This document shows positions 9,429 through 55,990 of a stretch of 64,000 bases of DNA, one piece after another. The position numbers and the translations under genes are program-made. The stretch is taken from the IMG/VR virus record IMGVR_UViG_3300036846_000743, positions 1 through 64,000 of that record; one strand, given 5' to 3'. How positions within the stretch are numbered: the first letter of the stretch is position 1; each line of letters starts with the position of its first letter. The notes under the pieces were generated by a model, which saw only the letters and a list, made by a program, of their open reading frames with translations, did not search any database and was not told the origin of the DNA.

Positions 9429-9457
9429 TATATGACAGGTTTTTTCCGTGTGGTAAG
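9429..9457 (-). promoter_or_regulatory. Candidate phage promoter, variant copy (CTTAC-N16-GTCATATA)
   Basis: Same -10-like box and spacing as three other copies; 42 nt upstream of the BRO start. Confidence 0.45.
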
Positions 9458-9606
9458 TTCCCGGAAAGTCAAGGTGAGTTCTCGGTGAAGTTCCAGAAGT
9501 TCTCCCCCGTAGATCTTTATGCTAGTGACTCTGTGAGAGAGAACTTATAGGAAAGTCCCGCTCTGACACGCTTTTCTGGCACAGTCTCATACCGTGACAT
9601 ATCGCG

Positions 9607-10311
9607 TCACGGTAGGTTAGCTGCCAGCGGCTGGCCCATGGCCGCGCGCCAGTAGTCGGTCGGGATCTTGGCCTTGTGACCGGCCTTGTGCAGCGCCGCG
9701 TAGATCGCGGGCGCATCGTCTCCCCACCATGCCAGCGGCAGGTTGGCCAACCAGAACAGCTGGTAGATGTTGAAGTCACGGTCCTGGCCGCCGGTTAGCT
9801 CTACCAGCCGCTCCAGGGCACCGCCGGTCACTTCGAGCTGGGTGAGCTGGCGTCTTTCCGCTCGCTGTGACTCGGTCAGGCGTGGCGAGTCCTGGGACTC
9901 GTCGTGCGGACCGGCTGGATAGGGGCCGCGCCGCTCGAATGAAGCTCGCTGGCCACCGACATCATAGTCTCGTCCAATGCCGAAATACAGATACGGCTCG
10001 CGCATCTGGAAGCACCAGCGCGTAGGGTCAATCACCTGCTTGTCCGGGGTCTCGATCCAGCCGTGTCGCTGGAACGGCCAGCCATGTCTGGGATGCTTCT
10101 TGGAGACCGGACCATAGTAATGCCCGTAGCGATCGACACCCACTACGAGCTTGGCCTTGAGCATCTTGCATGAGATCTCGTGGCATCGGTTCACCCAGCG
10201 ATTGGCCTTGAGTCCGATCGCTTTCTCGACTTCCGCGATCGACGGCAGATCGAGTGCTGTGGTGTTCGAAGCCCCGGCCTTGGGCATGACAACTCTACGG
10301 CGCTTCTTCAT
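9607..10311 (-). CDS. Hypothetical protein, possible transglutaminase/papain-like fold
   Basis: RCHEIS...HGWIE...VIDPT gives a plausible Cys-His-Asp triad spacing; AGGAG RBS. Confidence 0.4.
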   Translation of the reverse strand: MKKRRRVVMPKAGASNTTALDLPSIAEVEKAIGLKANRWVNRCHEISCKMLKAKLVVGVDRYGHYYGPVSKKHPRHGWPFQRHGWIETPDKQVIDPTRWCFQMREPYLYFGIGRDYDVGGQRASFERRGPYPAGPHDESQDSPRLTESQRAERRQLTQLEVTGGALERLVELTGGQDRDFNIYQLFWLANLPLAWWGDDAPAIYAALHKAGHKAKIPTDYWRAAMGQPLAANLP

Positions 10312-10699
10312 GCTTCAACTCCTGCTTGGTGAAATAACCGGATTGCACGCGGCAGCCGCGACGCCTGAGCCAGGCCATCTGCGCCGCGCGTGATGCCATG
10401 GGGTCGTACCTGGCCCACATCGCGATGTGCTGCCGGAGCTGAGGCGTCAGCCTGGTGCCGTGCTTCTCGTAGATGACGCGGAACCGCTCGCTGTTGACGT
10501 AAGTATCGTCGGCCCATCGCAGCACGCGATCCCAGCACCGACTACGGCTGTTCGACAGGGTCCTCGGCGCGTAGACCAGCGAAGCATTATTGCCCATGAC
10601 CATCGGCACGATAGCCATGAACATGCTGGGCGGCTGCGGCGGTGGGGGTGGTGGAGGTGGTGGCGGGGGCGGAGCCCAGCGCGCGGCAAGTGCGACCAT
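10295..10699 (-). CDS. Hypothetical protein with an N-terminal polyproline tract
   Basis: Run of 12 Pro after MVALAARWA; the tract uses mixed Pro codons. Confidence 0.45.
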   Translation of the reverse strand: MVALAARWAPPPPPPPPPPPPQPPSMFMAIVPMVMGNNASLVYAPRTLSNSRSRCWDRVLRWADDTYVNSERFRVIYEKHGTRLTPQLRQHIAMWARYDPMASRAAQMAWLRRRGCRVQSGYFTKQELKHEEAP

Positions 10700-10714
10700 C
10701 AGAGGGATCCTCCT

Positions 10715-11818
10715 TCAGGTTCGTTTATCGCGGAAACAGCCGTAGCGGGCAACAAGCCGCCGGCCTTCGCGGATACTCAAATAGGCGAGAGCATCCTCGA
10801 CCGGCACCCGCGGGTTGATGAGCCCATCGGGATAACGCAGCGCCCTGGCCACGGCAGACACCACCACGCGACGTTTGGGCCTGGGTATGACGACATGGAG
10901 CAAGGGCTTATTGCTCCGTGCCAGCTCGTGCACCTTCTTGGGCACGTTGGCACCGTCGACGGCCAAGATCACCTGATGGACCTGGACCTCCCAGGGATAA
11001 GCATGATCATCGACGCAGCGGAAGTGAATCACTTCGAGCATGCCGCCGCCTGGCCCGGCAGCCTTCAAGAGCGCCTTGGACTCGCTCAGCCGATGAAGCC
11101 GGGCATCGGGCGCGCCACGGACGCGGCTATCCAGGAACGTGCTCAGGCCACAGCGCTGGATCGTGCCGCTGATCAACTGCCCGCTCTTGTCTCCCGTGAT
11201 CCGGACATTCCTCACAGGCTTTGGCACAGATCGCGGCAACCGGAAGGTGAAGATCCGCCGGACCAGGTCGTAAGGACTCTTGCTGCCGACTTCGACGTCC
11301 TTTATACTCCGTATAAAGGACGCCGACTTCTCAGGTTTCGGGCCAGTATCGACCGGCCGGACCCGCCGTTTTACCCCTGGTGGTGACGGAAAGAAGCGCG
11401 AGTCGATCTTCAACCAGTATTGCCTGACGTCGCGCGCCCAGCAGAACGGACAGATCTGCCTGAGCTTGCAAGGTCTACGACCTTCCTTCTTGTCGAAGGT
11501 CATGACAAAAGCCACCGGACAGGACATGGCGTTGGGCAATCGCGACTTCTTGCCAGGCAGGTTGAATGGCTTCCAGCCCGCCTCAGCCAGCTGGACGACC
11601 CTGCGACGCCACAGATGCAGTATCCAGGCCGTGGCATCTGAGATATCAGCGTCGCTCCTGAGCCGGCCGAAGGTGGGCCGCAGAACCGCGGAGAGCTGAA
11701 CCTGGTCTTGGTACCGCAACGGTACCGCCGAGACCCTGTAACCGGGATTGGGCGGCCTCTTGCGAAACCTGGAACCGTCCGATGGAGACGCCTCGACGTC
11801 TAGGAGCTTGTCTGACAT
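10715..11818 (-). CDS. Rep_1-like (pC194/pUB110-type HUH) protein with degenerate motifs
   Basis: In order: MSC-x16-CKLRQICPFCWAR Cys cluster; IFTFR (motif I-like); GMLEV...WEVQVHQVIL (motif II, QVH for HUH); ALRYP (motif III Tyr); RRLVARYGCFR C-terminal box. GGAGG RBS before MSDKLL. Confidence 0.5.
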   Translation of the reverse strand: MSDKLLDVEASPSDGSRFRKRPPNPGYRVSAVPLRYQDQVQLSAVLRPTFGRLRSDADISDATAWILHLWRRRVVQLAEAGWKPFNLPGKKSRLPNAMSCPVAFVMTFDKKEGRRPCKLRQICPFCWARDVRQYWLKIDSRFFPSPPGVKRRVRPVDTGPKPEKSASFIRSIKDVEVGSKSPYDLVRRIFTFRLPRSVPKPVRNVRITGDKSGQLISGTIQRCGLSTFLDSRVRGAPDARLHRLSESKALLKAAGPGGGMLEVIHFRCVDDHAYPWEVQVHQVILAVDGANVPKKVHELARSNKPLLHVVIPRPKRRVVVSAVARALRYPDGLINPRVPVEDALAYLSIREGRRLVARYGCFRDKRT

Positions 11819-12251
11819 GGGACCTCCGTGGGGCCATTTGGGGCAGTTTGCGACAGTTTTCGCCAGATGCATTTGACCACGGAATGAGTGACATACGCTT
11901 GTCGCAATCATTCCAGGCTGCGCAAGTCTTGAAGGGTTCGAGACTTCTGGAGAATTAAACAAGTTGCACCAAGTGTTGCAACTATTGAAGCCTCGGACGC
12001 AAGTACTTGCTGGTATTGGTTTTAGTTAGCCTAAATATGGGAAGAAGACTTGTCAAGTCACTAGCCTATTGTTTTTTGCTAGTGACTACTACGTAGATAA
12101 CTTTTTGTGAGAGGTCGCCGCTTCGCGACCTCCCTCTCACAAAAACGGAAAACTTTTTTGTTCGCTTTTTCGATCCGGTACCCAAGTCCTAGCGCCACCA
12201 TCTCGCGCGCCGATCCGGCGAAGCCCTTGAGTCGCCGTCACGGCACCGAGA

Positions 12252-12290
12252 TGCTACTTCCGAGGTAGCATTGCTACTTCCGAAGTAGCA
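12252..12290. repeat. Tandem pair of 19-bp palindromic units TGCTACTTCCGA(G/A)GTAGCA
   Basis: Two copies at 12252-12270 and 12272-12290, differing at one position. Confidence 0.9.
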
Positions 12291-12968
12291 AACCTGCGGG
12301 ATCTAGCGCTATGTTAAGTCCCACAGGTTTTCGTCCTGAATTCCCGGGAAGGGGGAAATTCTTTCATCCGGCTTTCCCTATAGGGCCCTGTTTTTGGTTT
12401 TTTGAGACCCTACTCTCTTGTTTAGTGTTCACAGTGAACGCTCGCGTTCACTGACGTGAACGTTCACGTTCATACCAGCCAGCTAACTGTTCGAGGAACA
12501 GTGCGCACATGCCTAAGAGGATCCCCAACTGCTGATCGAGGCTGGTCTTTCATTTGCACCCGTCAGTCTTCCACTTCAGGGCTCGAGCTTTTCACAAAGA
12601 CCGGTTTTTCCCTCGAACTTTTTCATTTCGAAGTCAAAGTCTTTCGTGCGGCTTTCCCAGGAGGTCTGTTATCTAGCTCTAATGTTTAGATCCCCAGCCA
12701 GCCAGCGCTGGTTGGCCGCCAACCAGCGACAACCAGCGACAGCCAGAGCTGGCAGGCCCCTGAAGCGCGCAATCCATTGCCGCGCCAACAGCTTGGCGCG
12801 GCTCCAGTTGCGCCGCCAGCATTGGCGTCTGGCTTCGCTGATCACTTGGAGTAGTGAATGTTGGTTTTTCACTACCTTGACTTTCCGAAAGGGACTTTCC
12901 GTTCAGCAAAGTTCCGCTGGTTCATGAACCGGCGATGAACCAGCGAACCAAGAAACTTCGCTGAACTC

Positions 12969-13011
12969 GAGGGTTGGTTTTCCAACCCTGGGAGGGTTGG
13001 TTTTCCAACCC
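12969..13011. repeat. Tandem pair of 20-bp hairpin units GAGGGTTGGTTTTCCAACCC
   Basis: Identical copies at 12969-12988 and 12992-13011; each folds as GGGTTGG-TTTT-CCAACCC. Confidence 0.9.
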
Positions 13012-13174
13012 ATCTGGCGCAAGTCCGATGCAGATCCTATTTTCGCTCCGATGAAGATCCGATGATCGAGCGGTTGCTAGCCTTAATATTTAGGCACTAC
13101 TAGGCATGTGCGCACCGAAGCGTCCCGATGCGACTGGAGACGTCGCCAGCCGCTCAAATGTAACCAGAATGTGG

Positions 13175-13513
13175 CTATTCCTGGACTCTGCTGGACTTTG
13201 CTGGACCGACAACAGGGCCTTTGCTCATCAGTTCGAGAATGGTGGCCGAGACCTTGGTCTCGTCGAGATAGTCGGCGGGATCACTCCCGGAGAGAGCGCG
13301 CCGGACCTTGGTCTCGATGTCTACCACATCGAGCACGCCGATCGCCACCTCGGCGTGGTACATATCGAGCGCCAGCTCGGCAGCGTCGCTGCGAGAGCCG
13401 GCCTTGACCTTGTAGGTATGAGTGCCCAGGCCGGCCTCCGAGTCCATCTCAGCATCATCGATTGTGCAGCCTTCAGCCAGGGTCACAGTCACTTTCACGT
13501 CATAGGCAGTCAT
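13175..13513 (-). CDS. Hypothetical protein
   Basis: AGGAGG RBS; acidic 112 aa ORF. Confidence 0.6.
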   Translation of the reverse strand: MTAYDVKVTVTLAEGCTIDDAEMDSEAGLGTHTYKVKAGSRSDAAELALDMYHAEVAIGVLDVVDIETKVRRALSGSDPADYLDETKVSATILELMSKGPVVGPAKSSRVQE

Positions 13514-13543
13514 CAGGACCTCCTTGAATACGCAGCGTAACGG

Positions 13544-13744
13544 TTAAAGAACAGGATCGTTGGGGTCGATGTCATCGAGCACGTCTTGGCCGGTCTCCAG
13601 GTCGACCAGGGTCTCGACCGACGTCTCTCCATGGATGTTCAGTGCCACCTCGACGAAGGCATCCGCCGGGCTCTCAGCCTCGACCTCGATGTCGAACGGG
13701 CCCTTGCCGCCAGTTCCGGTAGCTCGATATTTGCGCACAGCCAT
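13544..13744 (-). CDS. Hypothetical protein
   Basis: AAGGAG RBS; 66 aa. Confidence 0.55.
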   Translation of the reverse strand: MAVRKYRATGTGGKGPFDIEVEAESPADAFVEVALNIHGETSVETLVDLETGQDVLDDIDPNDPVL

Positions 13745-13907
13745 TTCGGGTTACTCCCTTCGTTGTTGATGTAGTGGGTTAGACCCCTTGAGTGAGTAAA
13801 AAGAATGGGCCGGCCCAAAGGCAGCGTCCTGCCCTTCGACCGGCCCTCCGGGATCAGCGAGGCCGAAGCCCCGAATCACGGGCTGCCAGACCCGGCGCCG
13901 GGCCCAG

Positions 13908-14339
13908 CTAGTGCACAGGTGTGTCAGTAGGTGCGGGCGCTGGCGGATCAACCAGCTCGGCGATGGGCTCAGCGCCCGGCTTCGGCTTGATATTGAGCCG
14001 CAGCGCCACATTGATGCCGGACTCATCCCAGCCGATATCGAAAAAACCCCCAGCCTGGCTGAAATGGAAGTAGGTCAGGTCTATCTCCTCGAGCAGGTCC
14101 AAGAAGTCGAACTCGGCCAGCTCGTAGATCTCGTTGCCCTTCTGGCCGTTGCCTTCAGACTTCTCTTCTTCAACGACGATGTTGGGCCAGGCTTCCAGGG
14201 TATAGCACTCCAGGTTCCCGTCGTAGTAGCACTCGGTCTGTGCCCCGGCTATGAACCAGCAGCCCATAGCCTCGTCGAAGATCATTTGCAGGGCCTGTTC
14301 GAGCCGCTGGTAGATCCGAGCTTCTTCTTCCTCGGTCAT
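13908..14339 (-). CDS. Hypothetical acidic protein
   Basis: AGGAGG RBS; 143 aa. Confidence 0.6.
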   Translation of the reverse strand: MTEEEEARIYQRLEQALQMIFDEAMGCWFIAGAQTECYYDGNLECYTLEAWPNIVVEEEKSEGNGQKGNEIYELAEFDFLDLLEEIDLTYFHFSQAGGFFDIGWDESGINVALRLNIKPKPGAEPIAELVDPPAPAPTDTPVH

Positions 14340-14492
14340 CGGATCCTCCTACTATGCGTTGAGCTGACCAATACGAAACAGGGTAGGGATCACTTGCGTG
14401 GAACGGACCCCTTGGGAGTACCCTAAACAAAGCCAGGGAGTTCACCCAGCCCTCGCATTATCCGTTCTTTTTGATCCCAGTAACGTGCGACC

Positions 14493-15080: not shown

Positions 15081-15115
15081 CTCATTCTCCGTACAAAAGT
15101 GTCGAAAGTCCTCAG

Positions 15116-16283: not shown

Positions 16284-16309
16284 CGGGATCCTCCTGGTTC
16301 ACCGGGGCT

Positions 16310-19987: not shown

Positions 19988-20149
19988 GTCATCTCCCTAC
20001 GCGGTTCAAGTAAGTTGCGATGCAGTACCAGTACCAGGCCCCTTGCTCTTCTGCGCGGGGCAGGCACCACCAGCAAAACCAGAAGCCGCAGATCTGCTGC
20101 TCGAGGTTATCGCGGCGTTCGCAGTAGTAGCATTCGTCGGTTCTCATGG

Positions 20150-21019
20150 TCATGGCTCGAAATACTTGGCCAGTTTGTGCAGGTCACGGGCAAGCCGATA
20201 GAAGCCGTAACGCTCGAAGTCACGGGCCCGCTGGCCACTACGACCGAGCACCTCACCAATCTGGTGAAAGGTCATCGGCGGATCGTCGCCCAGACCGTAG
20301 CGCAGCACAAGAGTCGCCGCCCACAGCGGCTTGAGATATTCCAGCGTGTTGTACAGCTTGTTCCCCAGCCACCTGCGCTCGGCGTAGTCCTCGACGGGAG
20401 GAAGATCGGCGACCAGGTTATCGAGCGCGTCCTGGTTCTCATCAGGATCACGCGCGCGTACCTGGAACGCCCGGCGCCCATGTTCCAGGATCTTGATCTG
20501 CCGTTTCTTGAGCCTGAGCGCCGCCGCCACTGTCGTCCAGTGCGGGATATCGCCGAGCGTGATCATGAGCAGCTGCTCAGCTTTATCCCACCTTTTCAGG
20601 GCTTTGCGAACGGCATCAGGCACGGAGACCAGCTGATCATCGAGATGGATGGCCTTGATGACCCGGTTCACGATGTGATAGCGAGCGTAGGTGATAAAGC
20701 GGGCATTGCCGCCGACTATATAGTCAGGTATGGCTTCGAGAAGGCCGAGGTTACCAGCCTGGATCAGGTCCATGACGCGAACCCGGGAATGTCTGCCTTC
20801 CTCACGGCAGCCGCGCGTGTAAGCCCGGTGGAACCAACCGGCGCACCAGATGACATAGCGGAGATGCCGATGAATCAACTCCTGTCTTGCCTCTTCGCAT
20901 CCTTGCTTGGTCCGTATGATCAGTTCCAGTTCTTGGGCAGGTGTCGGCGGATCTAGCCCCAGTTCTCTGATCTGGCGTAGGTAGGTGGAGCGGCCGCGAC
21001 CCGGTATGCGGGCCTTCAT
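20150..21019 (-). CDS. Phage-encoded sigma70-family RNA polymerase sigma factor (regions 1.2, 2, 3, 4; no region 1.1)
   Basis: TYLRQI (1.2), ARQELIHRHLRYV (2.1), DLIQAGNLGLLEAI (2.2), RFITYA (2.3), VLVL-like TLVLRYGL...MTFHQIGEVLG (4). Confidence 0.9.
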   Translation of the reverse strand: MKARIPGRGRSTYLRQIRELGLDPPTPAQELELIIRTKQGCEEARQELIHRHLRYVIWCAGWFHRAYTRGCREEGRHSRVRVMDLIQAGNLGLLEAIPDYIVGGNARFITYARYHIVNRVIKAIHLDDQLVSVPDAVRKALKRWDKAEQLLMITLGDIPHWTTVAAALRLKKRQIKILEHGRRAFQVRARDPDENQDALDNLVADLPPVEDYAERRWLGNKLYNTLEYLKPLWAATLVLRYGLGDDPPMTFHQIGEVLGRSGQRARDFERYGFYRLARDLHKLAKYFEP

Positions 21020-48315: not shown

Positions 48316-48451
48316 GCTTATCTTTCTGTTGGGGTGGGAGACTTGGGTATTGGCAATCTCGTTGTTGGGGATTGGCTTGGTGGCGAACTCAGCGCCGGGT
48401 ATTTCTGCTAAGCGAGTTCTGCGACGTGGAACTTCCAGTAAACAACCGTAT

Positions 48452-48667
48452 TTACTGGTCAACCTTTTCCAGCAGAACCGCGAGCCAACCAGCGGTGACT
48501 TCAATCGACCTCGAATGGGAGTTAGTAGAATGAGCAACACCAGTGGATCCAACGGATGTCATGGACCTAACGATCCAACCTTGTTTGAGTAACTCGGTGA
48601 GATGTTCCTTAACATCTAGCTCGTTGGGTTTCTGCGTAGTAAGCCCGATCGTGATCAGTTTCTGCAC
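48452..48667 (-). CDS. DUF4177-like small protein
   Basis: LTELLKQGWIV...WLAVLLEK; GGAG RBS. Confidence 0.5.
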   Translation of the reverse strand: MQKLITIGLTTQKPNELDVKEHLTELLKQGWIVRSMTSVGSTGVAHSTNSHSRSIEVTAGWLAVLLEKVDQ

Positions 48668-48763
48668 TTCAACATTTCTCCAATGGCCGAACGATAAAGC
48701 TCACTTGTTCGGCCGGCACAAGTGAGCTGTCTAGGACATAGGGTGAGATATAAGAAAAAGGGT

Positions 48764-48795
48764 AAAGACGGCGGCCGTAGTACGCGGCCGCCGTC
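48764..48795 (-). terminator. Hairpin of the AAAGACGGCG family (copy 1)
   Basis: Minus strand GACGGCGGCCGC-GTACTA-CGGCCGCCGTC-TTT. Confidence 0.6.
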
Positions 48796-48811
48796 GTGCA
48801 AACAAGTTAGA

Positions 48812-49141
48812 TCACTTCTTAACGGGTGGTGCCGGAGCAGTCTTGGTTGTCGCTTCAGCCGGAGCCGGAGTGGCAGCCGGAGCAGCGGGCGGAGCAGGAG
48901 CAGCCGGAGCGGCAGTCAACGCAGGAGCGGCCACCTCGTCCACGATGGCGCGGACGATCACAGGCTTGTCATTGGTCGTGATCCTCACGACCTTCCTGCT
49001 GGTATTGGCCGGCACCTTGACCTCCGTCACTGTCGTATTTGTGCCTTCCGGAAAAAGATCCGGATCTCCGGTGCAGCCAACGGCGCCGAGGGTGGCAAAG
49101 ATCAGGGAAACGCACGCAAACCGACTCATGAACTTACGCAT
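48812..49141 (-). CDS. Putative lipoprotein with an Ala/Pro-rich tail
   Basis: MRKFMSRFACVSLIFATLGAVG-C lipobox; AGGAG RBS. Confidence 0.7.
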   Translation of the reverse strand: MRKFMSRFACVSLIFATLGAVGCTGDPDLFPEGTNTTVTEVKVPANTSRKVVRITTNDKPVIVRAIVDEVAAPALTAAPAAPAPPAAPAATPAPAEATTKTAPAPPVKK

Positions 49142-49257
49142 CGAAACTCCTAACGTAGTTGTGGTGGTGAAGCTGCTAACAAGCAGAAGAACCGAAGTTG
49201 GGGAAGTAGGAACGGCGGCTGCAACATGCAGTCGCCAACACTGAGATACACGACGGG

Positions 49258-49587
49258 TCAGCCTCCGGAGTCCGGCGCTGCTTTGTACGCGAGTGCAACT
49301 ATCACCAGGATGATCAACCAACCGAGCCCGTACAGGGCACCGATGAGGATCAGCCCGGAAACCATCAACAGGATGGTGTTTATCAACTTGCTGCGGAGTA
49401 CCCACCGGACCAGTACCATGACTGTCCTGCGCCAGAGCCATGTGGCGCACAGCCAGCGGAAAAAGATCCAGATACTCGCGATGGACGGTGAGAGGGTTAC
49501 GCTTTTACCCCCGACGACGACCACAGGATTGGCTAGAACAGCTGAGACATGAGCGTTGAAGCTGTTTACCTTCCTGTCTTCTTCCAT
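49258..49587 (-). CDS. Membrane protein
   Basis: Probable start MEEDRK; C-terminal hydrophobic helices. Confidence 0.55.
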   Translation of the reverse strand: MEEDRKVNSFNAHVSAVLANPVVVVGGKSVTLSPSIASIWIFFRWLCATWLWRRTVMVLVRWVLRSKLINTILLMVSGLILIGALYGLGWLIILVIVALAYKAAPDSGG

Positions 49588-49610
49588 GGCTTCTTTCGTA
49601 TCGCTGGAAA

Positions 49611-49644
49611 TGAAAGACGGCGACCACAACGAGCGATCGCCGAC
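49611..49644 (-). terminator. Hairpin of the AAAGACGGCG family (copy 2)
   Basis: TGAAAGACGGCGACCACAACGAGCGATCGCCGAC, near-identical to 50227-50260. Confidence 0.6.
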
Positions 49645-49675
49645 ATGATGGTTAGCTGAAGTCCGCACGGTCGGA

Positions 49676-50194
49676 TCAACTCGACCGTGATACGGTAACT
49701 CCATTGATCGTCGCCTCACTGGCAGTCAGCTTCGTGATCGGCGCATTATCGAACACGGTCACGGAATGGGACTTCCAGCAGACAATTGCCCAGACACGCG
49801 TTACATGGGCTGTCAGCTTACCGTCACGGACGCTCCACACGCCCTTGGCGTTACGCGTCGTGAACGTGCCGTCGCGTTTGAGGTCGACGTCGACCATCTT
49901 CCCGTTGACGCACAAGGCGTAGTGACCGGCGCAGTTTTCACTCGTGACCGGCAGCGGGCTGCTCGGAACAACCGTGACTGACAGCTGGCCGCCCGGAACA
50001 ACTTGCATGTTCGCGGAGGAATACGTGCCGCCGATGCGCACGTTGCCGCCTCCAGACGGGAGAGGCCAAGGTTGTTTGATCTCTCCCCCGGCACCGCTAT
50101 CAATCGTGAATTTGCAGCCTGTGGTGGTAGTGAGACCGGCAATCACGCAAGCCAACAAGACGAAGCGCATGAACCGGCCAGTGATCTTTCTCAT
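49676..50194 (-). CDS. Putative lipoprotein, beta-rich
   Basis: MRKITGRFMRFVLLACVIAGLTTTTG-C lipobox. Confidence 0.7.
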   Translation of the reverse strand: MRKITGRFMRFVLLACVIAGLTTTTGCKFTIDSGAGGEIKQPWPLPSGGGNVRIGGTYSSANMQVVPGGQLSVTVVPSSPLPVTSENCAGHYALCVNGKMVDVDLKRDGTFTTRNAKGVWSVRDGKLTAHVTRVWAIVCWKSHSVTVFDNAPITKLTASEATINGVTVSRSS

Positions 50195-50226
50195 CGAAAC
50201 TTTTTCCTTCTACTACGTGTACGAGC

Positions 50227-50260
50227 TGAAAGACGGCGACCGCAACGAGCGATCACCGTC
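50227..50260 (-). terminator. Hairpin of the AAAGACGGCG family (copy 3)
   Basis: TGAAAGACGGCGACCGCAACGAGCGATCACCGTC. Confidence 0.6.
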
Positions 50261-50275
50261 ACTGGAACTTAGTGA

Positions 50276-51190
50276 TCACCAGCTGCGCAGTCCGGGCATG
50301 GCATAGGTCCAGACCAGCCCGCACATGCAGAAGGTGAGGACGGTCAGCCCGAGCAGCCAGCCGACAGATGCCAGCTGCCGCTTCCATGTGACCGTCCTGA
50401 AGTGGCAGGCATTGGTGATGACGTCCATGATGCTGGCGACCAGCAGGGTGACGACCACCAAGGCGACGGCACACACGACCAGGCTCAAAGCATGGGTATA
50501 TACCCACCAGAAAGCAGCTATGACCGCTCGCCAGTAGAGCATGCCGGCACAAACGACGACGGCAGCCGCCACAAAGGCGGCAGCACCGAGCATGAATTGC
50601 TTAAACCATGAAGGGACCTTGCCCAACCCCAACCATACCTTGAAACCATCGATCTTGGTCCAGAACTTGCCGGCCAAGTTCGGCAGATACAATGGCGGTG
50701 GTGGACCCGGTGGACCCGGTGGAGCCGGTGGAGTCGGTGGAGCCGGTGGGATTGGCGGACCCGGCGACGGACTCGGCGATAGGCCCGGGAAAGCCGCCAC
50801 GGCTGCCGCCATGGCTGCCGCCATAGGATCGACAGCTGGCGGACCCGGAGGGGCTGGAGACGGAGCTGAAGCCGGAGCTGGCGGAGCCGCAGCAGCCGCC
50901 AACGCTAACATAGCCGTCTGGACAATCGCCTTGAGATCGCTGACTTCCTTGGCGAGTGCCTCGATGTCCTCGATCTTGACGGTCCTTTGGTTTGAAGCCG
51001 TCGGCGTTGAGTTCGCTGTCTTAGCTCCTCCTGCCTTCGCCGACGGCTTTGCTCCCGACCCTGCCACAGGTACCTGAACTGGTGCCTGCGCTGGTGCCTG
51101 AGCTGGTATCGGAGCCGGTATTGGAGCAGAATTAGCAGGTTGCCCATTAACGGGCACTGGGGGTGAAGCGGTCTGGGCCGCTGTACTCAT
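50276..51190 (-). CDS. Pro/Ala-rich membrane protein with three C-terminal TM helices
   Basis: Low-complexity Pro tracts, a short coiled coil and a hydrophobic C-terminus; AGGAGG RBS. Confidence 0.7.
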   Translation of the reverse strand: MSTAAQTASPPVPVNGQPANSAPIPAPIPAQAPAQAPVQVPVAGSGAKPSAKAGGAKTANSTPTASNQRTVKIEDIEALAKEVSDLKAIVQTAMLALAAAAAPPAPASAPSPAPPGPPAVDPMAAAMAAAVAAFPGLSPSPSPGPPIPPAPPTPPAPPGPPGPPPPLYLPNLAGKFWTKIDGFKVWLGLGKVPSWFKQFMLGAAAFVAAAVVVCAGMLYWRAVIAAFWWVYTHALSLVVCAVALVVVTLLVASIMDVITNACHFRTVTWKRQLASVGWLLGLTVLTFCMCGLVWTYAMPGLRSW

Positions 51191-51210
51191 GGAAAGAACC
51201 TCCTGATATT

Positions 51211-51240
51211 TGTTGGGGATCTGTTGGGGTTTTGTTGGGG
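51211..51240. repeat. Triple tandem TGTTGGGG (CCCCAACA on minus), period 11
   Basis: TGTTGGGGATC-TGTTGGGGTTT-TGTTGGGG, directly upstream of the RBS of 51190. Confidence 0.8.
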
Positions 51241-51388
51241 ATCAAACAAGGCAATGCACAAGGCCGCCGCCTACTTCAACTCATTCCTCCGCTCCCCCCA
51301 ACAACAAGAGTAGAGAAGGAGGAGCCGGCGGCGGCCCCTGTACGGGGCGTATGTGGGTGGTGATCGGGTTGACTCGAACCGGAGCAGG

Positions 51389-51754
51389 TTACTTCGCTAT
51401 GCCGCCGCCAGGACCTTTCGGTTCCTGCGTATTGACATGAGCGAGCCTGTCCCGCATGTCCTCGAACAGACCTGCGAGCTTATCCACCTGGGAGGTGACA
51501 GCTTCCTTCGAGGTGTGGATGATCTCCGCAGACTTGCGAGCGTCTCCAGCGTTGTCAGCAGCCCGGCTCGCTTCATCCTGGGCTTCCTGAACCAACTTCA
51601 CGATCTTCTCCATGGCCTTCTCGGCCGCATGAGCCTGGCTCTGGGCCGCCCTCGCGGCATCCCAGGCTTCCTGGTTGTAATGCCACTGAACACAGCTGAT
51701 GACCACCATGAGAACGATCATGGCGGCGACGGAATGCTTCTTGACGAAATTCAT
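51389..51754 (-). CDS. Membrane-anchored coiled-coil protein
   Basis: N-terminal TM/signal, then an Ala/Glu-rich helix; AGGAG RBS. Confidence 0.65.
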   Translation of the reverse strand: MNFVKKHSVAAMIVLMVVISCVQWHYNQEAWDAARAAQSQAHAAEKAMEKIVKLVQEAQDEASRAADNAGDARKSAEIIHTSKEAVTSQVDKLAGLFEDMRDRLAHVNTQEPKGPGGGIAK

Positions 51755-51904
51755 CTGCGCATACTCCTAGCTTGGTAGTTGGGGAACGAACACTGACTGG
51801 GGACGTGGACCGACCGAGCGATTGACATTCCCTCCGTCATGCGACGGAAGAAAGGGAACCGGCCGGCCCACGCTTACGGTTGGGGAACTAACAATCGAAC
51901 CTGG

Positions 51905-52207
51905 TCAGGAGCGATACTCTACCAGCCGATGAGCAGGAAGCTGCTCGAGAATATCGGACGGTAGGTATTCGCATTCGGGCAACAGCCCATCCCCGACATC
52001 CGGCGTAGCATCGAGGTCTTGTCCAGTGACCTCGCCGGCACACAGAGAGCAGAGCCACACGGTGAACTCCTCACCCGCGACTACCAGCAACACGACATGA
52101 GTCGCGTCGAGGTCTCCGCACTGCGTACAGGAACAACAGGAACACTCTGGCACACAGTCAACGATCCAGGCGTCGCTGTCGACATCTGGTTGAAGACGTC
52201 CTTTCAT
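51905..52207 (-). CDS. Cys-rich hypothetical protein
   Basis: CSCCSCTQC...CSLC...CEY. Confidence 0.5.
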   Translation of the reverse strand: MKGRLQPDVDSDAWIVDCVPECSCCSCTQCGDLDATHVVLLVVAGEEFTVWLCSLCAGEVTGQDLDATPDVGDGLLPECEYLPSDILEQLPAHRLVEYRS

Positions 52208-52282
52208 TTGCTGGACTCCCTGCTACGATCACCATGCTTCCGGGCACGATGCCAGCGATCCACAACCTATGTAGATCAACGC

Positions 52283-52311
52283 TATATGACAGGAATCTGG
52301 GCGAAATTTAG
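52283..52311 (-). promoter_or_regulatory. Candidate phage promoter CTAAA-N16-GTCATATA
   Basis: Minus strand GCTAAATTTCGCCCAGATTCCTGTCATATA, intergenic, upstream of 52207. Confidence 0.6.
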
Positions 52312-52323
52312 CGCCCAGAAACG

Positions 52324-52367
52324 AAACGGCCCGGCTTGGAGGCAAACCTCCGGGCCGGGCCATTTTC
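52324..52367. terminator. Terminator-like hairpin after the PEP-CTERM gene
   Basis: GGCCCGGC-TTGGAGG-CAAA-CCTCC-G-GGCCGGGCC flanked by A and T runs. Confidence 0.6.
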
Positions 52368-52393
52368 AGCAGGATAACGTGGTAGCGCGTTGC

Positions 52394-53092
52394 TTACGCC
52401 TTGCGGACGGACCTGCGGAAGTACCGTCTGTAGGCGAGCACACCAGTGAGCCCGATGCCCATCAGGGACATCGAGGCAGGCTCAGGCACGGCCTGCTGCG
52501 AGAAACTACCGTTAGCGACGATCGTCGAACCTGGCGTCGCGAACAACCCGGCAAAGCTATTGATCCCCCCACCGAAGGTAGTTCCGGTAAAGGTGAAGTT
52601 GATATCGCCGCCCTTGGCAAACAGCGAGTAGTCAAACCGTGGGTTGTCGTTCTCGATCAGACTGACGATCTTGCCGCTCATATTGAAAAAGTTGGGCAAA
52701 ACGGTCGGGGCAACACCAGTCGTGGCGGTGAACGTCAGCATCGCTTCAGCGCCCGGCACGTCGCCAACGGTCTTGGTATAGGTTGATGGCGACAGCGCCA
52801 ACGAGTAGGTCTCCGAGCCAGTAGGCGTCACCAACAAGGTGATCGGCCCGTTGACCGAGATCGGCTCAGGTGTCAGCAGTGACACGCCGTTGACCGTGTT
52901 CACCTGACTGAACAGATTGGGTATCCGCGCGATCTCGATCGTCGCGGTACCTCCCGAGATCCCCATGTTCGTCAGCTCGACACCGCCGATCGAACCGGAG
53001 TCGCTGAACACCACGGTACCGGCTTGCGCCGATCCCAGGCCGGCGATCGCAGCGACCAAAGCCATGGCAAAACAGAGAGAACGCATCTTCAT
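52394..53092 (-). CDS. PEP-CTERM (exosortase-targeted) cell-surface protein
   Basis: Signal peptide MKMRSLCFAMALVAAIAGLGSAQA; Thr/Ser/Gly-rich body; C-terminal VPEPASMSLMGIGLTGVLAY-RRYFRRSVRKA. Confidence 0.9.
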   Translation of the reverse strand: MKMRSLCFAMALVAAIAGLGSAQAGTVVFSDSGSIGGVELTNMGISGGTATIEIARIPNLFSQVNTVNGVSLLTPEPISVNGPITLLVTPTGSETYSLALSPSTYTKTVGDVPGAEAMLTFTATTGVAPTVLPNFFNMSGKIVSLIENDNPRFDYSLFAKGGDINFTFTGTTFGGGINSFAGLFATPGSTIVANGSFSQQAVPEPASMSLMGIGLTGVLAYRRYFRRSVRKA

Positions 53093-53180
53093 ACTTCCGA
53101 TACTCCATACTAGAGACACGAACAGCGCTGTTCCGTACTCCACGCACGGAACCTGAAGCCCGGGCTATAGGGCTCCATAG

Positions 53181-53209
53181 TATATGACAGGCAGACGGCC
53201 GAAGTTTAG
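53181..53209 (-). promoter_or_regulatory. Candidate phage promoter CTAAA-N16-GTCATATA
   Basis: Minus strand GCTAAACTTCGGCCGTCTGCCTGTCATATA, upstream of the PEP-CTERM gene. Confidence 0.6.
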
Positions 53210-53275
53210 CCCCTTGTCCGCCTATCTGGACGGCCGGCCAGGCTGTTGCTTCTTTCCGACACGTGTGACCGCCGC

Positions 53276-53590
53276 CTAGAAAGTCCGGTCAGTAACTTTG
53301 TTGGCTGCGTTGACGTGCACAACGCGGACCTGCCTGGCCCGCAGGAATTGCTTGAAGCGGATCTTGTCCTGGGGCTGAAGCGCCGCCAGCTCGTTCTTGA
53401 ACGTCCGATATTCGGCCAGAACAGTCCGTTGTTTCTTGGGGCAGCGACCGCAGCCCCGGCCCTGCTTGACCTGAACCAGCCGGGCCAGATGGGGAAACTC
53501 ACTGCGAAAGTCTTCCCGCGCCACCAGCGAGTCGATCAGGCTGTTCTCGATCACGACAACGCCGCGCATGGTCTCTGTACCGGTCGACAT
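53276..53590 (-). CDS. Hypothetical basic protein
   Basis: GGAG RBS before MSTGTE; CGRC motif. Confidence 0.55.
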   Translation of the reverse strand: MSTGTETMRGVVVIENSLIDSLVAREDFRSEFPHLARLVQVKQGRGCGRCPKKQRTVLAEYRTFKNELAALQPQDKIRFKQFLRARQVRVVHVNAANKVTDRTF

Positions 53591-53592
53591 GT

Positions 53593-54081
53593 TCAGCTCT
53601 CCGAGCCAATGGTGATCGGGGGTGCCGTGTTCTGCTGATCCATCACGTTGAGGGTCTCGACCAGCTGATTCACCTCGTACAGGATCGCATTGTACGCATC
53701 GTTGGCGATTGACCGGCTGCGCACGATCAGGTCGACGTAGTCGAGCCGGTACCAGGGCGGGCGCGCGTTCTGGACCGGCCAGTCCTCGGGAAAGTCCTCG
53801 AGATCGGCCGGACTGCAAACACCATCGAACGCCCCCATGTACTCGATGGCTACCGGCGGCTGATCAACGGTACCGGCCTGTACCCTGGTGGGCACAAGCC
53901 GGTAGCGAAAGATCTTGGTCGGCATCTGGACCGCCCCCGTGACGACAAGGGTGAACCGAAAGCCGTCGATCACGTTGGGCACGTACCCTTGCTGGAACGT
54001 GGGAACCAGCGTGATCTGCCGGATCCCGGTGCCGACAATCAGGGTATCCGCGGACTGATCGAGCGACTGCGTGGTGGCCAT
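53593..54081 (-). CDS. Hypothetical protein (possibly virion structural)
   Basis: GGAGG RBS; 162 aa, beta-rich. Confidence 0.65.
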   Translation of the reverse strand: MATTQSLDQSADTLIVGTGIRQITLVPTFQQGYVPNVIDGFRFTLVVTGAVQMPTKIFRYRLVPTRVQAGTVDQPPVAIEYMGAFDGVCSPADLEDFPEDWPVQNARPPWYRLDYVDLIVRSRSIANDAYNAILYEVNQLVETLNVMDQQNTAPPITIGSES

Positions 54082-54126
54082 TTCACATCCTCCCTGCGTG
54101 ACACGTCGGCTGTCAGTCCGGCGAAC

Positions 54127-54582
54127 CTATCTCGGGGTGCGGTTGAAGTCCATGCTATCCGTTGCCCCGCACTCAGGACAGGTATTGTCCGGAAAGCCAA
54201 CCCTGGCCCTGTACGAGCAGTTGCGGCAGCGGATACGAAATTCCCGCGCGTCACCCTCCTCCTTCTGAAACGGCTCGATGTAAGTGACGCCCTGGCGGAC
54301 GAGCTTGTTCAGATAAACCAGCTCATCCAGGCAAACCTCGATGCGATCCATGAGGTCAGGCCCCGCGTGCTTAGGATCGTCCTTGAGCACAGCGTGGATG
54401 TCAACGGCAGACGCCGCGTACAGCTTGTGTACCTGGCGGCGCACGGCAGAACGAAAACTTATATACTCCTGTGTATGCTTTGCATTCTGGGTTGGCATCT
54501 GTACGGCCCTCGTAGTATGGCGATGCCGGGCGCAAAGAGAACGTATGTACTCCTGCATGCCCTCTGTGATCTTCTTTGGCAT
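54127..54582 (-). CDS. Hypothetical protein with a C-terminal zinc ribbon
   Basis: CRNC...CPECG. Confidence 0.55.
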   Translation of the reverse strand: MPKKITEGMQEYIRSLCARHRHTTRAVQMPTQNAKHTQEYISFRSAVRRQVHKLYAASAVDIHAVLKDDPKHAGPDLMDRIEVCLDELVYLNKLVRQGVTYIEPFQKEEGDAREFRIRCRNCSYRARVGFPDNTCPECGATDSMDFNRTPR

Positions 54583-54616
54583 TCGTACCCCCTTCGTAGA
54601 AACGAACGAGCCTGGT

Positions 54617-55030
54617 TCAGTGTTTCAGCTCGAAAGACTCTTCTTCCTCGACGGTCACCGCACGCTTGGTGATCACCTCGTCGTTGCGAATGATGTAGAT
54701 GACAAACTCGTCGCCCTTCTTGCCGGCGATAAAAGCGTCGGGCACCAGGAAGCCCTTCGCCCAGACCAACTTCTTGGTGGCGGATTCCGTCGGAATGTCT
54801 GTGAGCGGTCGGAACGCACCCATCGCGAAGTCAAAGAACATGACGGGCCTGCATCCCTCGTCGGCATCATCCGCCTGGTCGTTCCTCTTTTTCTTCTTCT
54901 TGGGTTTCAGTTCGACTGCGTAAGCATAGATAGCTTTCCTGTCGCTCTTCGGCGCCAGGTAGCTGATCGTGAGCGGTTTGATCACAGCACTCTTCACCCA
55001 TCGCATGCCGACTGCCTCCCGGCTGACCAC
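54617..55030 (-). CDS. Hypothetical protein
   Basis: 137 aa basic ORF. Confidence 0.5.
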   Translation of the reverse strand: MVSREAVGMRWVKSAVIKPLTISYLAPKSDRKAIYAYAVELKPKKKKKRNDQADDADEGCRPVMFFDFAMGAFRPLTDIPTESATKKLVWAKGFLVPDAFIAGKKGDEFVIYIIRNDEVITKRAVTVEEEESFELKH

Positions 55031-55272
55031 GCCATGAAGTAACGGTTGCCACCGTGACCGCCACGGCGATCTGCCAGCTTTTCCTGCTCGAACCGATCCA
55101 GCATCAGCTGGACCTGTTCGAGAACTTGCCTGTGAGGATATGCACGGTATGTCGGACGATCGTGCAGCAAACCGGTAGCTTCTTCAGCGCTCAGCCCGCC
55201 GGCTATGGTCTCGACCAGCAACTCTAACAGGTCAACCTTGAGCAGCTTGAGATCGATCGAAGATGGTTCCAT
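54994..55272 (-). CDS. Hypothetical protein
   Basis: GGAGG RBS before MEPSSIDLK (3' part of the listed ORF 54994..55722). Confidence 0.5.
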   Translation of the reverse strand: MEPSSIDLKLLKVDLLELLVETIAGGLSAEEATGLLHDRPTYRAYPHRQVLEQVQLMLDRFEQEKLADRRGGHGGNRYFMAWSAGRQSACDG

Positions 55273-55289
55273 TCGTACCTCCGATAGTG

Positions 55290-55318
55290 AAAAAAATAGG
55301 CCGCCCCGAGGGGCGGCC
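55290..55318 (-). terminator. Rho-independent terminator
   Basis: Minus strand GGCCGCCCC-TCG-GGGCGGCC-TATTTTTTT. Confidence 0.7.
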
Positions 55319-55352
55319 GGTTGCCGGTGCTGGTGGTGGTGAGTCGGTCCGG

Positions 55353-55895
55353 TCACTTCAGCGGCAGCTTCGAGCCCCTGAGCATCTCCGACACGAAGCG
55401 CAGCGAGTTCTGCCGGAACTTCTCCTGGGCTTCCTCGCCGCGAATGTCGGCGCGATCCATCAACGCCACGAGGCGACGCTGGGAATCCCGCTTGACCTCG
55501 ACGCTGGGCCAGCGATCGAGCGTGTCCGCGCTGTAGATTGCCGTGAGCACGGTCATCAGCTGCAACTTGTCGACGTCCGGCTTGGCTTCCAGCGCGGCAA
55601 GCTGCCGCAAGGCCACGTCGACCACGCTCGGCTTGGGCTTGGGCGTCGACCGGTACTGCGTGCGATCCATCAGCACCCCGAGCCGCTCCATGCAGGTCAT
55701 GCCAACATCCTTGTCGGGCCAATGGTTGCCGTGGTGCACGGTGAGGCCCAGCCCGGCAACCACGTCCAGGTCGAGCATGAACGTGGCGTCGAGGGGCCGC
55801 TGCTGTGCCCGTCGCTCCAGGTCTTCAAGGCCATCCATCAGCAGCTTGAACAGATCCGGTTCAGGACCGGCTGTCGCCAGCGAATCCGGTGACAT
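55353..55895 (-). CDS. Hypothetical protein
   Basis: Helical ~180 aa ORF; AAAGG RBS. Confidence 0.6.
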   Translation of the reverse strand: MSPDSLATAGPEPDLFKLLMDGLEDLERRAQQRPLDATFMLDLDVVAGLGLTVHHGNHWPDKDVGMTCMERLGVLMDRTQYRSTPKPKPSVVDVALRQLAALEAKPDVDKLQLMTVLTAIYSADTLDRWPSVEVKRDSQRRLVALMDRADIRGEEAQEKFRQNSLRFVSEMLRGSKLPLK

Positions 55896-55961
55896 TGGTG
55901 ATCTACCTTTCGTAGAAAAAGTTGGGTAGGACCACTCCACAACTAGGAAGTGGCCTTACTG

Positions 55962-55990
55962 TTTATGACATTTTTCCGGCTGATCTTTAG
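55962..55990 (-). promoter_or_regulatory. Candidate phage promoter CTAAA-N16-GTCATAAA
   Basis: Minus strand CTAAAGATCAGCCGGAAAAATGTCATAAA, just after the collagen gene stop. Confidence 0.55.

What the first reader, a model, noticed from the sequence alone, without database searches (positions are those of the whole stretch)
9429..55990. Recurrent bipartite motif CTAAA-N16-GTCATA(T/A)A: candidate novel phage promoter
Seen: exact spacing at 52283-52311, 53181-53209 and 55962-55990, plus a CTTAC variant at 9429-9457. All four are intergenic, on the minus strand and 40-90 nt upstream of minus-strand starts (BRO, a Cys-rich ORF, PEP-CTERM, 55353 ORF). A partial plus-strand copy (CTAAA-N16-GTCAAG) sits at 12031-12057. 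Known: sigma factors read -35/-10 pairs with fixed spacers; this is not the sigma70 TTGACA/TATAAT consensus. Inference: a regulon read by the phage sigma at 20150-21019 or by a host alternative sigma.
Basis: partly seen in the sequence, partly recalled or inferred. Interest (0 to 1): 0.75.

Follow-up and report, generated by a model that had tools for sequence, protein, structure and literature searches.

The report
Jumbo-phage promoter read by its own sigma

Summary
CTAAA-N16-GTCATA(T/A)A occurs three times in the window, against 0.00 expected, and a fourth time elsewhere in the 226-kb phage genome. A slightly relaxed form gives 7 sites, against about 0.17 expected.

All sites lie between genes, face the next ORF 41-88 nt away, and often follow a terminator. 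The same motif sits at matching intergenic positions in three syntenic relatives, where it is better conserved than the proteins it precedes. Clade variants (CTAAAT..GGCATA, CTTAAT..GTCATA) occur in all 40 further family members scanned: 156 hits, 153 on the majority strand, against 12 for a reversed-pattern control.

The layout is that of a sigma70-family promoter: a -35 box, a 17-bp spacer and a -10 box with A at -11. A structured leader follows.

A second, divergent sigma at genome 70212-71003 is present in all family members complete enough to judge. It is homologous to the sigma found in virions of Salmonella phage Arash. Its region 4.2 helix changes together with the -35 variant. The family also encodes one bacterial-type beta/beta' RNA polymerase.

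Best reading: a dedicated phage promoter class, possibly early. No transcription start sites or binding data exist.

The parts
55962..55990 (-). Promoter copy 1: -35 CTAAAG, 16-nt gap, -10 GTCATAAA. It precedes ORF 55353-55895.
   Evidence: Exact match. Orthologous copies at G2 102271 and G1 10580/10161.
53181..53209 (-). Promoter copy 2: CTAAAC...GTCATATA. It precedes the PEP-CTERM protein gene.
   Evidence: Exact match. Orthologous copies at G2 104650 and G1 4094 (N17), between the same two conserved genes.
52283..52311 (-). Promoter copy 3: CTAAAT...GTCATATA. It precedes the Cys-rich ORF.
   Evidence: Exact match. Orthologous copies at G2 105677, G1 3137 and G003 47062. The downstream protein is only 30-38% identical while the promoter blocks are conserved.
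9429..9457 (-). Probable weaker copy: -35 is CTTAC; the -10 GTCATATA and the following tcAGTGG are perfect. It precedes the BRO-N/Ant-like gene.
   Evidence: Two-mismatch match. PWM score 31 bits, though this site was among the 15 used to build the PWM; the best chance hits score 13-16. The G003 orthologue upstream of its BRO gene keeps only a decayed remnant.
55926..55959 (-). Leader stem-loop directly after promoter 1.
   Evidence: MFE fold, z = -2.4.
53130..53177 (-). Two leader stem-loops after promoter 2.
   Evidence: MFE fold, z = -3.1.
52253..52281 (-). Leader stem-loop after promoter 3.
   Evidence: MFE fold, z = -1.9.
55353..55895 (-). ORF (180 aa, no family match) driven by promoter 1.
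   Evidence: Gene call, translation, no Pfam or PHROG hit.
55299..55318 (-). Terminator-like hairpin with T-run. It closes the promoter-1 unit into a single-gene cassette.
52394..53092 (-). Gene for a secreted PEP-CTERM protein, driven by promoter 2.
   Evidence: Pfam PF07589. Signal peptide and C-terminal sorting motif visible in the translation. Homologues in G1 and G2.
51905..52207 (-). Cys-rich 100-aa ORF driven by promoter 3.
   Evidence: Translation. Homologues directly downstream of the motif in G2 and G003.
51856..51869 (-). Weak terminator-like hairpin after the Cys-rich ORF.
7606..9387 (-). BRO-N / anti-repressor-like gene (593 aa) downstream of the 9429 variant.
   Evidence: Pfam PF02498 and PHROG Ant families.
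20150..21019 (-). Accessory RpoD-like sigma ('sigma-B'), unique to this genome.
   Evidence: Pfam r2 and r4, NCBIfam RpoD/SigA-like. No homologue in 24 relatives.
12031..12057 (+). Not a member of the motif family.
   Evidence: It lacks the -10 block, scores below the PWM threshold of 12 bits, and lies in the repeat-rich gene-free stretch 11873-13174.

Best explanation
The motif is a phage-specific sigma70-family promoter. If the first A of GTCATA is placed at -11, CTAAA(s) occupies -35 to -31 and (y)GTCATAyA covers -14 to -7, with 17 bp between the two hexamers. A semi-conserved GC-rich block sits near -25, and nnAGTGG spans the predicted start site. Each copy drives a short unit, often one gene: an upstream terminator, the promoter, a structured 5' leader, an ORF and a terminator. 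The most likely reader is not the sigma at 20150-21019. It is a divergent sigma70-family protein conserved throughout this jumbo-phage family ('sigma-A', genome 70212-71003, outside the window). Sigma-A probably works with the phage's own single bacterial-type beta/beta' RNA polymerase (genome 116389-125329). By analogy with Salmonella phage Arash, whose virions contain the homologous sigma plus beta and beta', and with the general rule for RNAP-encoding jumbo phages, these may be early promoters served by an injected holoenzyme. What is shown: the motif, its statistics, its positions, its conservation, the existence and distribution of sigma-A, and the phage RNAP genes.
For: Statistics: 3 exact copies against 0.00 expected. 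The relaxed pattern gives 7 sites in the genome; about 0.17 is expected (my composition-based estimate for the pattern).

Position: all sites are intergenic and face an ORF with a ribosome-binding site 41-88 nt away. The one plus-strand copy in a genome that is almost entirely minus-strand faces its own small ORF and terminator.

Conservation: syntenic relatives G1, G2 and G003 (37-80% identical proteins) carry the motif at the same intergenic slots. In the aligned orthologous spacer only the terminator, -35, -10 and start-site blocks are conserved. In 23 aligned sites, G, T, C, A, A, A of the -10 block are invariant.

Family-wide: variants occur in 16 of the first 22 relatives scanned (the other six, including the complete but distant G024, gave no hit at one mismatch) and in 40 of 40 further records that carry sigma-A. 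In those 40 there are 156 hits, 153 on the majority strand, against 12 for the reversed control. Genome GC ranges from 43% to 65%.

Sigma-A: phmmer and profile searches of PDB sequences hit only sigma factors (best 3.5e-8, covering regions 2.3-4.2). The top 50 Foldseek matches are all sigma factors. It also matches the PHROG sigma family and only sigma families in NCBIfam. Orthologues are present in every sufficiently complete relative. It is homologous to Arash gp10, which was detected in virions together with beta and beta' (PMC10585845).

Co-variation: records whose sigma-A region 4.2 helix reads PGAVSQRAA use CTAAA almost exclusively. Records with PARVSQIR (G004, G005/6, G059, G047) use CTTAAT in about 20 of 25 sites.

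Polymerase: there is one beta/beta' gene set.

Precedent: in RNAP-encoding jumbo phages, the motif that can be found bioinformatically has turned out to be the early promoter (PMC7598289).

Leaders: the 45 nt after the motif are more structured than shuffled sequence. Mean z is -1.59 (n=39) against -0.24 for random windows, p about 1e-7.
Against: There are no transcript 5' ends, no binding data and no isolate for this phage. The co-occurrence of sigma-A and the motif is confounded by shared ancestry, since everything in the family co-occurs. The -35 / helix co-variation may reflect a single evolutionary event. The apparent -10 co-variation (QGL with GTCATA, QSL with GGCATA) is not clean, because several QSL genomes use both GGCATA and GTCATA. 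Only 5-10 sites exist per genome, so most genes must use other, undetected signals. Arash, the only isolate with proteomics, lacks this motif, and its sigma is only 22% identical, so the 'virion-delivered, early' step rests on distant analogy. Whether sigma-A binds the phage or the host core enzyme is unknown.
Confidence: 0.6

Rival explanations
1. A host alternative sigma reads the motif: flagellar sigma28/FliA, or an ECF sigma. On this reading the cassettes are accessory genes tied to a host regulon.
For: The -35 box CTAAAG is identical to the P. aeruginosa sigma28 box TCTAAAG at -36 to -30. With A of GTCATA at -11, the C of CTAAA falls at -35, exactly as in sigma28 promoters (PMC12784957). 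GTC is also the core of the sigmaE -10 element (PMC7598289). The terminator-promoter-ORF-terminator layout resembles moron cassettes. One cargo is a PEP-CTERM surface protein.
Against: The sigma28 -10 box GCCGATAA (its CCGA core) is absent from all 23 aligned sites and from the listed family sites. The CTTAAT clade departs from the sigma28 -35 box. The motif tracks phage lineage across 43-65% GC genomes and carries extra conserved blocks, near -25 and at the start site, that are not part of sigma28 promoters. No tyrosine integrase was found in 5 family genomes, so lysogenic 'moron' expression is unlikely.
Confidence: 0.12
2. Host sigma70 recognises the -10-like CATAWW hexamer, while a phage activator or sigma appropriator reads the CTAAA box in place of a -35 element. 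This is the architecture of T4 MotA/AsiA middle promoters.
For: The -10 block is close to TATAAT in the AT-rich clades (GTCATAAT is 5 of 6). The -35 box is unlike TTGACA. T4 middle promoters pair a sigma70 -10 element with a phage-specific upstream box (general knowledge of T4 MotA/AsiA; AsiA is mentioned in PMC7824862).
Against: C at -12 is invariant where sigma70 prefers T. In this clade -7 is A, not T. No MotA- or AsiA-like gene was identified, though none was specifically searched for. A complete sigma with its own regions 2.4 and 4.2 is conserved in the family, and its 4.2 helix co-varies with the -35 variant.
Confidence: 0.1
3. One reading: the regulon of the phage sigma encoded at 20150-21019.
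For: It is a genuine sigma with regions 2 and 4, encoded in the same genome as the motif.
Against: No homologue was found in G1 or G2 or in 22 further relatives, including complete genomes. G000 served as a positive control in the Pfam search. In G2 the matching slot between the ribonucleotide reductase gene and the next gene contains a motif copy and no sigma gene. The motif nevertheless sits at orthologous positions in those relatives.
Confidence: 0.04
4. The motif is not a promoter. It is instead an operator for a DNA-binding regulator, an RNA-level element, or a target or scar of a mobile element.
For: In this genome three copies have inverted repeats around the -35 box. The conserved sequence extends into the transcribed region, and a leader hairpin follows.
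Against: The -35 inverted repeats are not conserved in relatives. There is no Rfam match. The sites show strict strand polarity toward downstream ORFs, fixed 16-17 nt spacing of two blocks, and an A/T-rich -10 block with an invariant A. They sit after terminators. No flanking target-site duplications or transposase genes were seen.
Confidence: 0.05

Closest known systems
Sigma28 / FliA-class promoters (TCTAAAG at -36..-30, GCCGATAA at -15..-8; PMC12784957)
   Same: Identical -35 box (CTAAAG/CTAAAC). The same distance from that box to the flipped A at -11. ATA at -11 to -9.
   Different: The block upstream of A-11 is (y)GTC, not GCCG. Related clades use CTTAAT or GGCATA. The candidate reader matches RpoD/SigA models better than FliA models, and none above a curated cut-off. 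The targets are phage cassettes, not flagellar genes.
[quoted passage not shown]
   Same: A phage with its own multisubunit RNAP. A strongly conserved, bioinformatically obvious motif lies in front of small genes of unknown function. The specificity subunit may be virion-delivered, by analogy with Arash.
   Different: Those promoters are a single block of about 10 nt, AT-rich and centred at -10, and those phages have two highly divergent split RNAP sets and no recognisable sigma (PMC7824862). Here the motif is bipartite with a -35 box, there is one bacterial-like beta/beta' set, and there is a recognisable sigma70-family factor.
Phage-encoded sigma factors with their own promoter classes (for example SPO1 gp28, gp33/34, T4 gp55, phiEco32 gp36; from general knowledge, not checked here)
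   Same: A phage sigma redirects transcription to a phage-specific consensus.
   Different: Those sigmas use the host core enzyme. This family also encodes beta and beta', and the consensus is new.
Salmonella phage Arash (OQ632216; PMC10585845)
   Same: The nearest isolate by RNAP (33% identity) and by sigma-A (gp10, 22% identity). Its sigma gene lies among structural genes, and sigma, beta and beta' are found in virions.
   Different: The motif is not enriched in Arash: 3 hits against 11 for the control. No promoters have been described for Arash.

Membership tests
sigma70-family bipartite (-35/-10) promoter | Two conserved blocks at a fixed spacing (17 +/- 1 bp between hexamers) | tested here: met
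   CTAAA, then 16 nt (some 17), then GTCATA. This puts 17-18 bp between the CTAAAn and CATAyA hexamers in 23 of 23 sites.
sigma70-family bipartite (-35/-10) promoter | A/T-rich -10 element with a conserved A at the melting position | tested here: met
   G, T, C, A, A, A of GTCATAyA are invariant in 23 sites.
sigma70-family bipartite (-35/-10) promoter | Intergenic, in sense orientation upstream of genes | tested here: met
   All window copies are 41-88 nt upstream of start codons. In the family scan 153 of 156 hits are on the majority strand. The plus-strand copy has its own ORF and terminator.
sigma70-family bipartite (-35/-10) promoter | Transcription starts 5-9 nt downstream of the -10 element | not testable with these tools
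   No transcript data are available.
sigma70-family bipartite (-35/-10) promoter | A cognate sigma binds the element | not testable with these tools
   A candidate (sigma-A) was identified, and its 4.2 helix co-varies with the -35 variant.
sigma28/FliA promoter class | -35 box TAAA / TCTAAAG | tested here: met
   CTAAA[G/C/T] in 19 of 23 aligned sites, compared with PMC12784957.
sigma28/FliA promoter class | -10 box GCCGATAA | tested here: not met
   None of the 23 sites contains CCGATA. The block is (y)GTCATAyA.
sigma28/FliA promoter class | Read by a FliA/WhiG-family sigma | tested here: inconclusive
   Neither phage sigma is FliA-like by NCBIfam. The host is unknown, so a host FliA cannot be examined.
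   The sigma is absent from 24 relatives, most of which carry the motif, while G000 rings as a positive control. The matching slot in G2 is empty of it.
phiKZ/AR9-type virion-RNAP early promoters | The phage encodes two sets of split, highly divergent beta/beta' subunits and no sigma | tested here: not met
   Only one set is found with Pfam Rpb2_6 and Rpb1_2, and two sigma70-family genes are present.
phiKZ/AR9-type virion-RNAP early promoters | A single AT-rich block of about 10 nt centred at -10 | tested here: not met
   The motif is bipartite with an equally conserved -35 box.
phiKZ/AR9-type virion-RNAP early promoters | Specificity factor and RNAP packaged in the virion, and early timing | not testable with these tools
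   This rests only on the Arash proteomics for homologous proteins and on the sigma-A gene lying beside a baseplate gene.

The most novel reading that the evidence does not exclude
A family of at least 50 uncultivated jumbo phages (about 180-226 kb where near-complete; 43-65% GC in the genomes fetched) carries a complete transcription system that is orthogonal to the host's: one bacterial-type beta/beta' RNA polymerase plus its own canonical sigma70-family factor, delivered with the virion. This information-rich bipartite motif would be its dedicated early promoter. Its -35 specificity has switched between clades (CTAAA to CTTAA) along with the sigma region 4.2 helix. That would be a third strategy beside phiKZ-type sigma-less RNAPs and RNAP-less phages that encode only sigmas.
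Probability: 0.4. Interest if true: 0.75.

Novelty: new variant of a known kind. Interest (0 to 1): 0.62.

Why it matters
A 2021 survey of jumbo phages found multisubunit RNAPs only in phages without sigma factors, and sigma factors only in phages without RNAPs (PMC7824862). This family, like the isolate Arash, has both, and no promoter has been described for such a system. The finding supplies a sharply defined consensus, roughly 200 natural promoter variants, and a candidate sigma with natural specificity variants. Together these make promoter recognition by a phage-encoded sigma-dependent holoenzyme directly testable. The promoter/sigma pairs could also serve as orthogonal expression parts. 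For annotation, the motif marks a discrete set of autonomous single-gene cassettes in these phages, including a PEP-CTERM surface protein and a BRO/anti-repressor-like protein.

Tried and rejected
- Nucleotide search of the phage collection with 51-57 kb found nothing.
- Rfam and tRNA scans of the window found nothing.
- The sigma70 consensus scan showed no enrichment around the sites.
- A -35 hairpin, like the hairpin promoters of phage N4, was considered. Three copies in this genome have inverted repeats around CTAAA, but relatives do not, so it was dropped.
- GCTAGAT, enriched in minus-strand intergenic DNA, was tested as a second promoter element. It is not conserved in relatives, so it was dropped.
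- Raw counting of gapped dyads for de novo motif discovery was swamped by repeats and base composition and was not informative.
- A listing of AT-rich intergenic octamers revealed no second recurrent promoter class.
- The -10 co-variation (sigma-A QGL versus QSL with GTCATA versus GGCATA) looked clean in 15 genomes but failed in the wider set, where QSL genomes use both forms.
- Arash was scanned for the motif and shows no enrichment.
- The 'moraphage' lineage paper describes a different family without RNAP.
- A literature search for the motif strings returned only noise.
- A temperate lifestyle was checked. No tyrosine integrase was found in 5 family genomes; serine recombinases were not tested.
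- The exact-pattern scan of IMG/VR mostly returned unrelated AT-rich contigs, but it did reveal the first two relatives.

Full report
**Observation.**
The pattern CTAAA-N16-GTCATAWA occurs exactly at 52283-52311, 53181-53209 and 55962-55990, all on the minus strand. None is expected in 100 dinucleotide-preserving shuffles. With two mismatches the 9429-9457 copy (CTTAC) appears as well. The window is the first 64 kb of a 226,073-bp IMG/VR virus record (61% GC, CheckV 100%) in which almost every gene lies on the minus strand. A fourth exact copy lies at genome 119557-119585 on the plus strand. A slightly relaxed pattern, CT[ATG]A[AC]-N16/17-GTCA[TC]A[TCA]A, finds 7 sites in the genome; from base composition I estimate about 0.17 by chance. 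All window copies are intergenic and sit 41-88 nt upstream of a start codon with a ribosome-binding site.

**Anatomy.**
The consensus of 23 sites from four related genomes is CTAAAnnTCGGGCnnnTTCnTGTCATATAnCAnTGGA, with G, T, C, A, A, A of the -10 block invariant. Several copies follow a hairpin and T-run directly. The first 45 transcribed nucleotides are more structured than shuffled sequence. Mean z is -1.59 over 39 sites, against -0.24 for 150 random windows (Mann-Whitney p about 1e-7). In the window the units look like single-gene cassettes:
- Promoter 55990, ORF 55353-55895, strong terminator 55299-55318.
- Promoter 53209, PEP-CTERM protein gene.
- Promoter 52311, Cys-rich ORF, weak terminator 51856-51869.

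The plus-strand copy is the useful exception in a genome that is almost entirely minus-strand. It faces its own 32-aa ORF and an 11-bp-stem terminator that stops short of the convergent RNA polymerase gene.

**Relatives.**
An exact-pattern scan of IMG/VR gave mostly unrelated single hits, but also two GC-rich contigs with several copies each. These (G1, G2), and later G003, are syntenic relatives with proteins mostly 37-80% identical. The motif sits at the same intergenic slots:
- G0 53181 matches G2 104650 and G1 4094.
- G0 52283 matches G2 105677, G1 3137 and G003 47062.
- G0 55962 matches G2 102271 and G1 10580/10161.
- G0 119557(+) matches G1 82687(+).

The Cys-rich protein downstream of the 52283 site is only 30-38% identical between genomes. 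In the aligned spacer, by contrast, the terminator, the -35 and -10 blocks and the start-site block are the conserved islands.

**The wider family.**
More distant relatives were found through the RNA polymerase gene (about 60% identity) and through sigma-A. In the first 22, the pattern with one mismatch hit 16; the six without a hit include the complete but most distant G024. These relatives carry clade variants with the same geometry:
- CTAAAT-N15-GGCATA(TT).
- CTTAAT-N15-GTCATA(AT).

All 40 further records scanned have exact matches to CTWAA-N16-GKCATA. There are 156 hits, 153 on the majority strand, against 12 for the reversed-pattern control. Genome GC in the family runs from 43% to 65%.

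**What kind of signal it is.**
If the first A of GTCATA is placed at -11, the C of CTAAA falls at -35 and the two hexamers are 17 bp apart. This is the classical sigma70-family layout. The -35 box equals that of sigma28: in P. aeruginosa, TCTAAAG lies at -36 to -30 and GCCGATAA at -15 to -8 (PMC12784957). The sigma28 -10 box, however, is never present. GTC also recalls the sigmaE -10 core. The motif is therefore a new consensus within a known architecture.

**Who reads it.**
The sigma at 20150-21019 is a real RpoD-like sigma. It has no homologue in G1, G2 or 22 other relatives, with G000 ringing as a positive control. In G2 the slot between the ribonucleotide reductase gene and the next gene holds a motif copy instead. 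It is an accessory gene of this one genome. G005 carries a different accessory sigma-like ORF.

Weak region-4 hits pointed to a conserved ORF of about 265 aa, here called sigma-A (genome 70212-71003). The evidence that sigma-A is a sigma factor is consistent across methods:
- Sequence and profile searches against PDB sequences hit only sigma factors (best 3.5e-8, spanning regions 2.3-4.2).
- The top 50 Foldseek matches to its predicted structure (mean pLDDT 73) are all sigma factors.
- PHROGs and NCBIfam agree.

Orthologues occur in every sufficiently complete relative. The gene lies next to a baseplate wedge gene. Its homologue in the nearest isolate, Salmonella phage Arash, is gp10. Proteomics found gp10 in virions together with the phage beta and beta' subunits (PMC10585845).

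The genome also encodes one bacterial-type RNA polymerase. It comprises a beta gene with a LAGLIDADG insert, a fusion of the beta C-terminus to the beta' N-terminus, and a likely beta' C-terminal gene.

**Co-variation.**
Sigma-A proteins whose region 4.2 recognition helix reads PGAVSQRAA go with CTAAA almost exclusively. Those reading PARVSQIR (G004, G005/6, G059, G047) go with CTTAAT in about 20 of 25 sites. This supports direct readout by sigma-A, but it may reflect a single evolutionary event. A similar pattern for the -10 block (QGL versus QSL) did not survive wider sampling.

**Timing.**
Only 5-10 sites exist per genome. They precede small genes of unknown function and none lies in the structural module. 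Reviews note that in RNAP-encoding jumbo phages the one motif that can be found bioinformatically is the early promoter used by the virion enzyme (PMC7598289). Together with the Arash proteomics, this makes 'early promoters of an injected sigma-A holoenzyme' the most attractive reading. It is inference by distant analogy. Arash itself lacks the motif.

**Rivals.**
- A host sigma28 or ECF sigma: same -35 box, wrong -10 box, and the motif follows the phage lineage.
- Host sigma70 plus a phage factor that reads the -35 box, as at T4 middle promoters. This is not excluded.
- The 20150-21019 sigma: contradicted by its distribution.
- Not a promoter: argued against by polarity, spacing and position.

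No tyrosine integrase was found in five family genomes, which weakens a lysogenic 'moron' reading.

**Novelty.**
A 2021 comparative survey found sigma factors only in jumbo phages without RNAPs, and RNAPs only in phages without sigmas (PMC7824862). I found no description of promoters for the RNAP-plus-sigma type. The finding is a new promoter consensus, with a new candidate reader, inside a known architecture.

Noticed in passing
window 11873-13174: A 1.3-kb gene-free stretch with paired palindromic 19-mers (12252-12290), a 20-mer repeated at 12969 and 12992, and a perfect 15-nt inverted repeat (12501-12515 / 13101-13115). It may be a replication origin or a regulatory hub.
   Followed up: partly
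window 9410, 12301, 12671, 20951, 24192, 48614 (minus strand): All six minus-strand copies of GCTAGAT lie outside called genes (the plus strand has three more, one of them coding). One sits between the 9429 promoter and its ribosome-binding site. The word is not conserved in relatives G1, G2 or G003, so its meaning is unclear.
   Followed up: partly
window 20150-21019: An RpoD-like sigma factor unique to this genome, inserted between the ribonucleotide reductase gene and the next conserved gene. In relative G2 that slot holds a copy of the promoter motif instead. Relative G005 carries a different accessory sigma-like ORF.
   Followed up: yes
window 52394-53092: A phage-encoded secreted protein with a PEP-CTERM sorting signal, conserved in G1 and G2. 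It implies a host with an exosortase system.
   Followed up: partly
genome 119827-125329 (outside the window; loci L090, L097): The phage RNA polymerase beta gene carries a LAGLIDADG homing-endonuclease-like domain. The beta C-terminus is fused to the beta' N-terminus in a single ORF.
   Followed up: partly
genome 134681-142444 (locus L086): A 2587-aa multidomain protein combining LigD 3'-phosphoesterase, DNA-ligase OB and SNF2 helicase domains.
   Followed up: no
window 48364-51879 (minus strand): The word TCCCCAAC recurs 6 times in the large intergenic gaps of this region, including a tandem pair at 51212 and 51234. CCGGGCTTC is also enriched in intergenic DNA and is probably part of terminator stems.
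   Followed up: no
G1 79634 and 10580; genome 175735 and 119816: Terminator T-runs followed directly by AGCTAT recur just upstream of several promoter copies. This may be a conserved boundary between terminator and promoter.
   Followed up: no
window 19988-20149: A small Cys-rich ORF (about 53 aa) fills the gap between the accessory sigma gene and the next gene.
   Followed up: no
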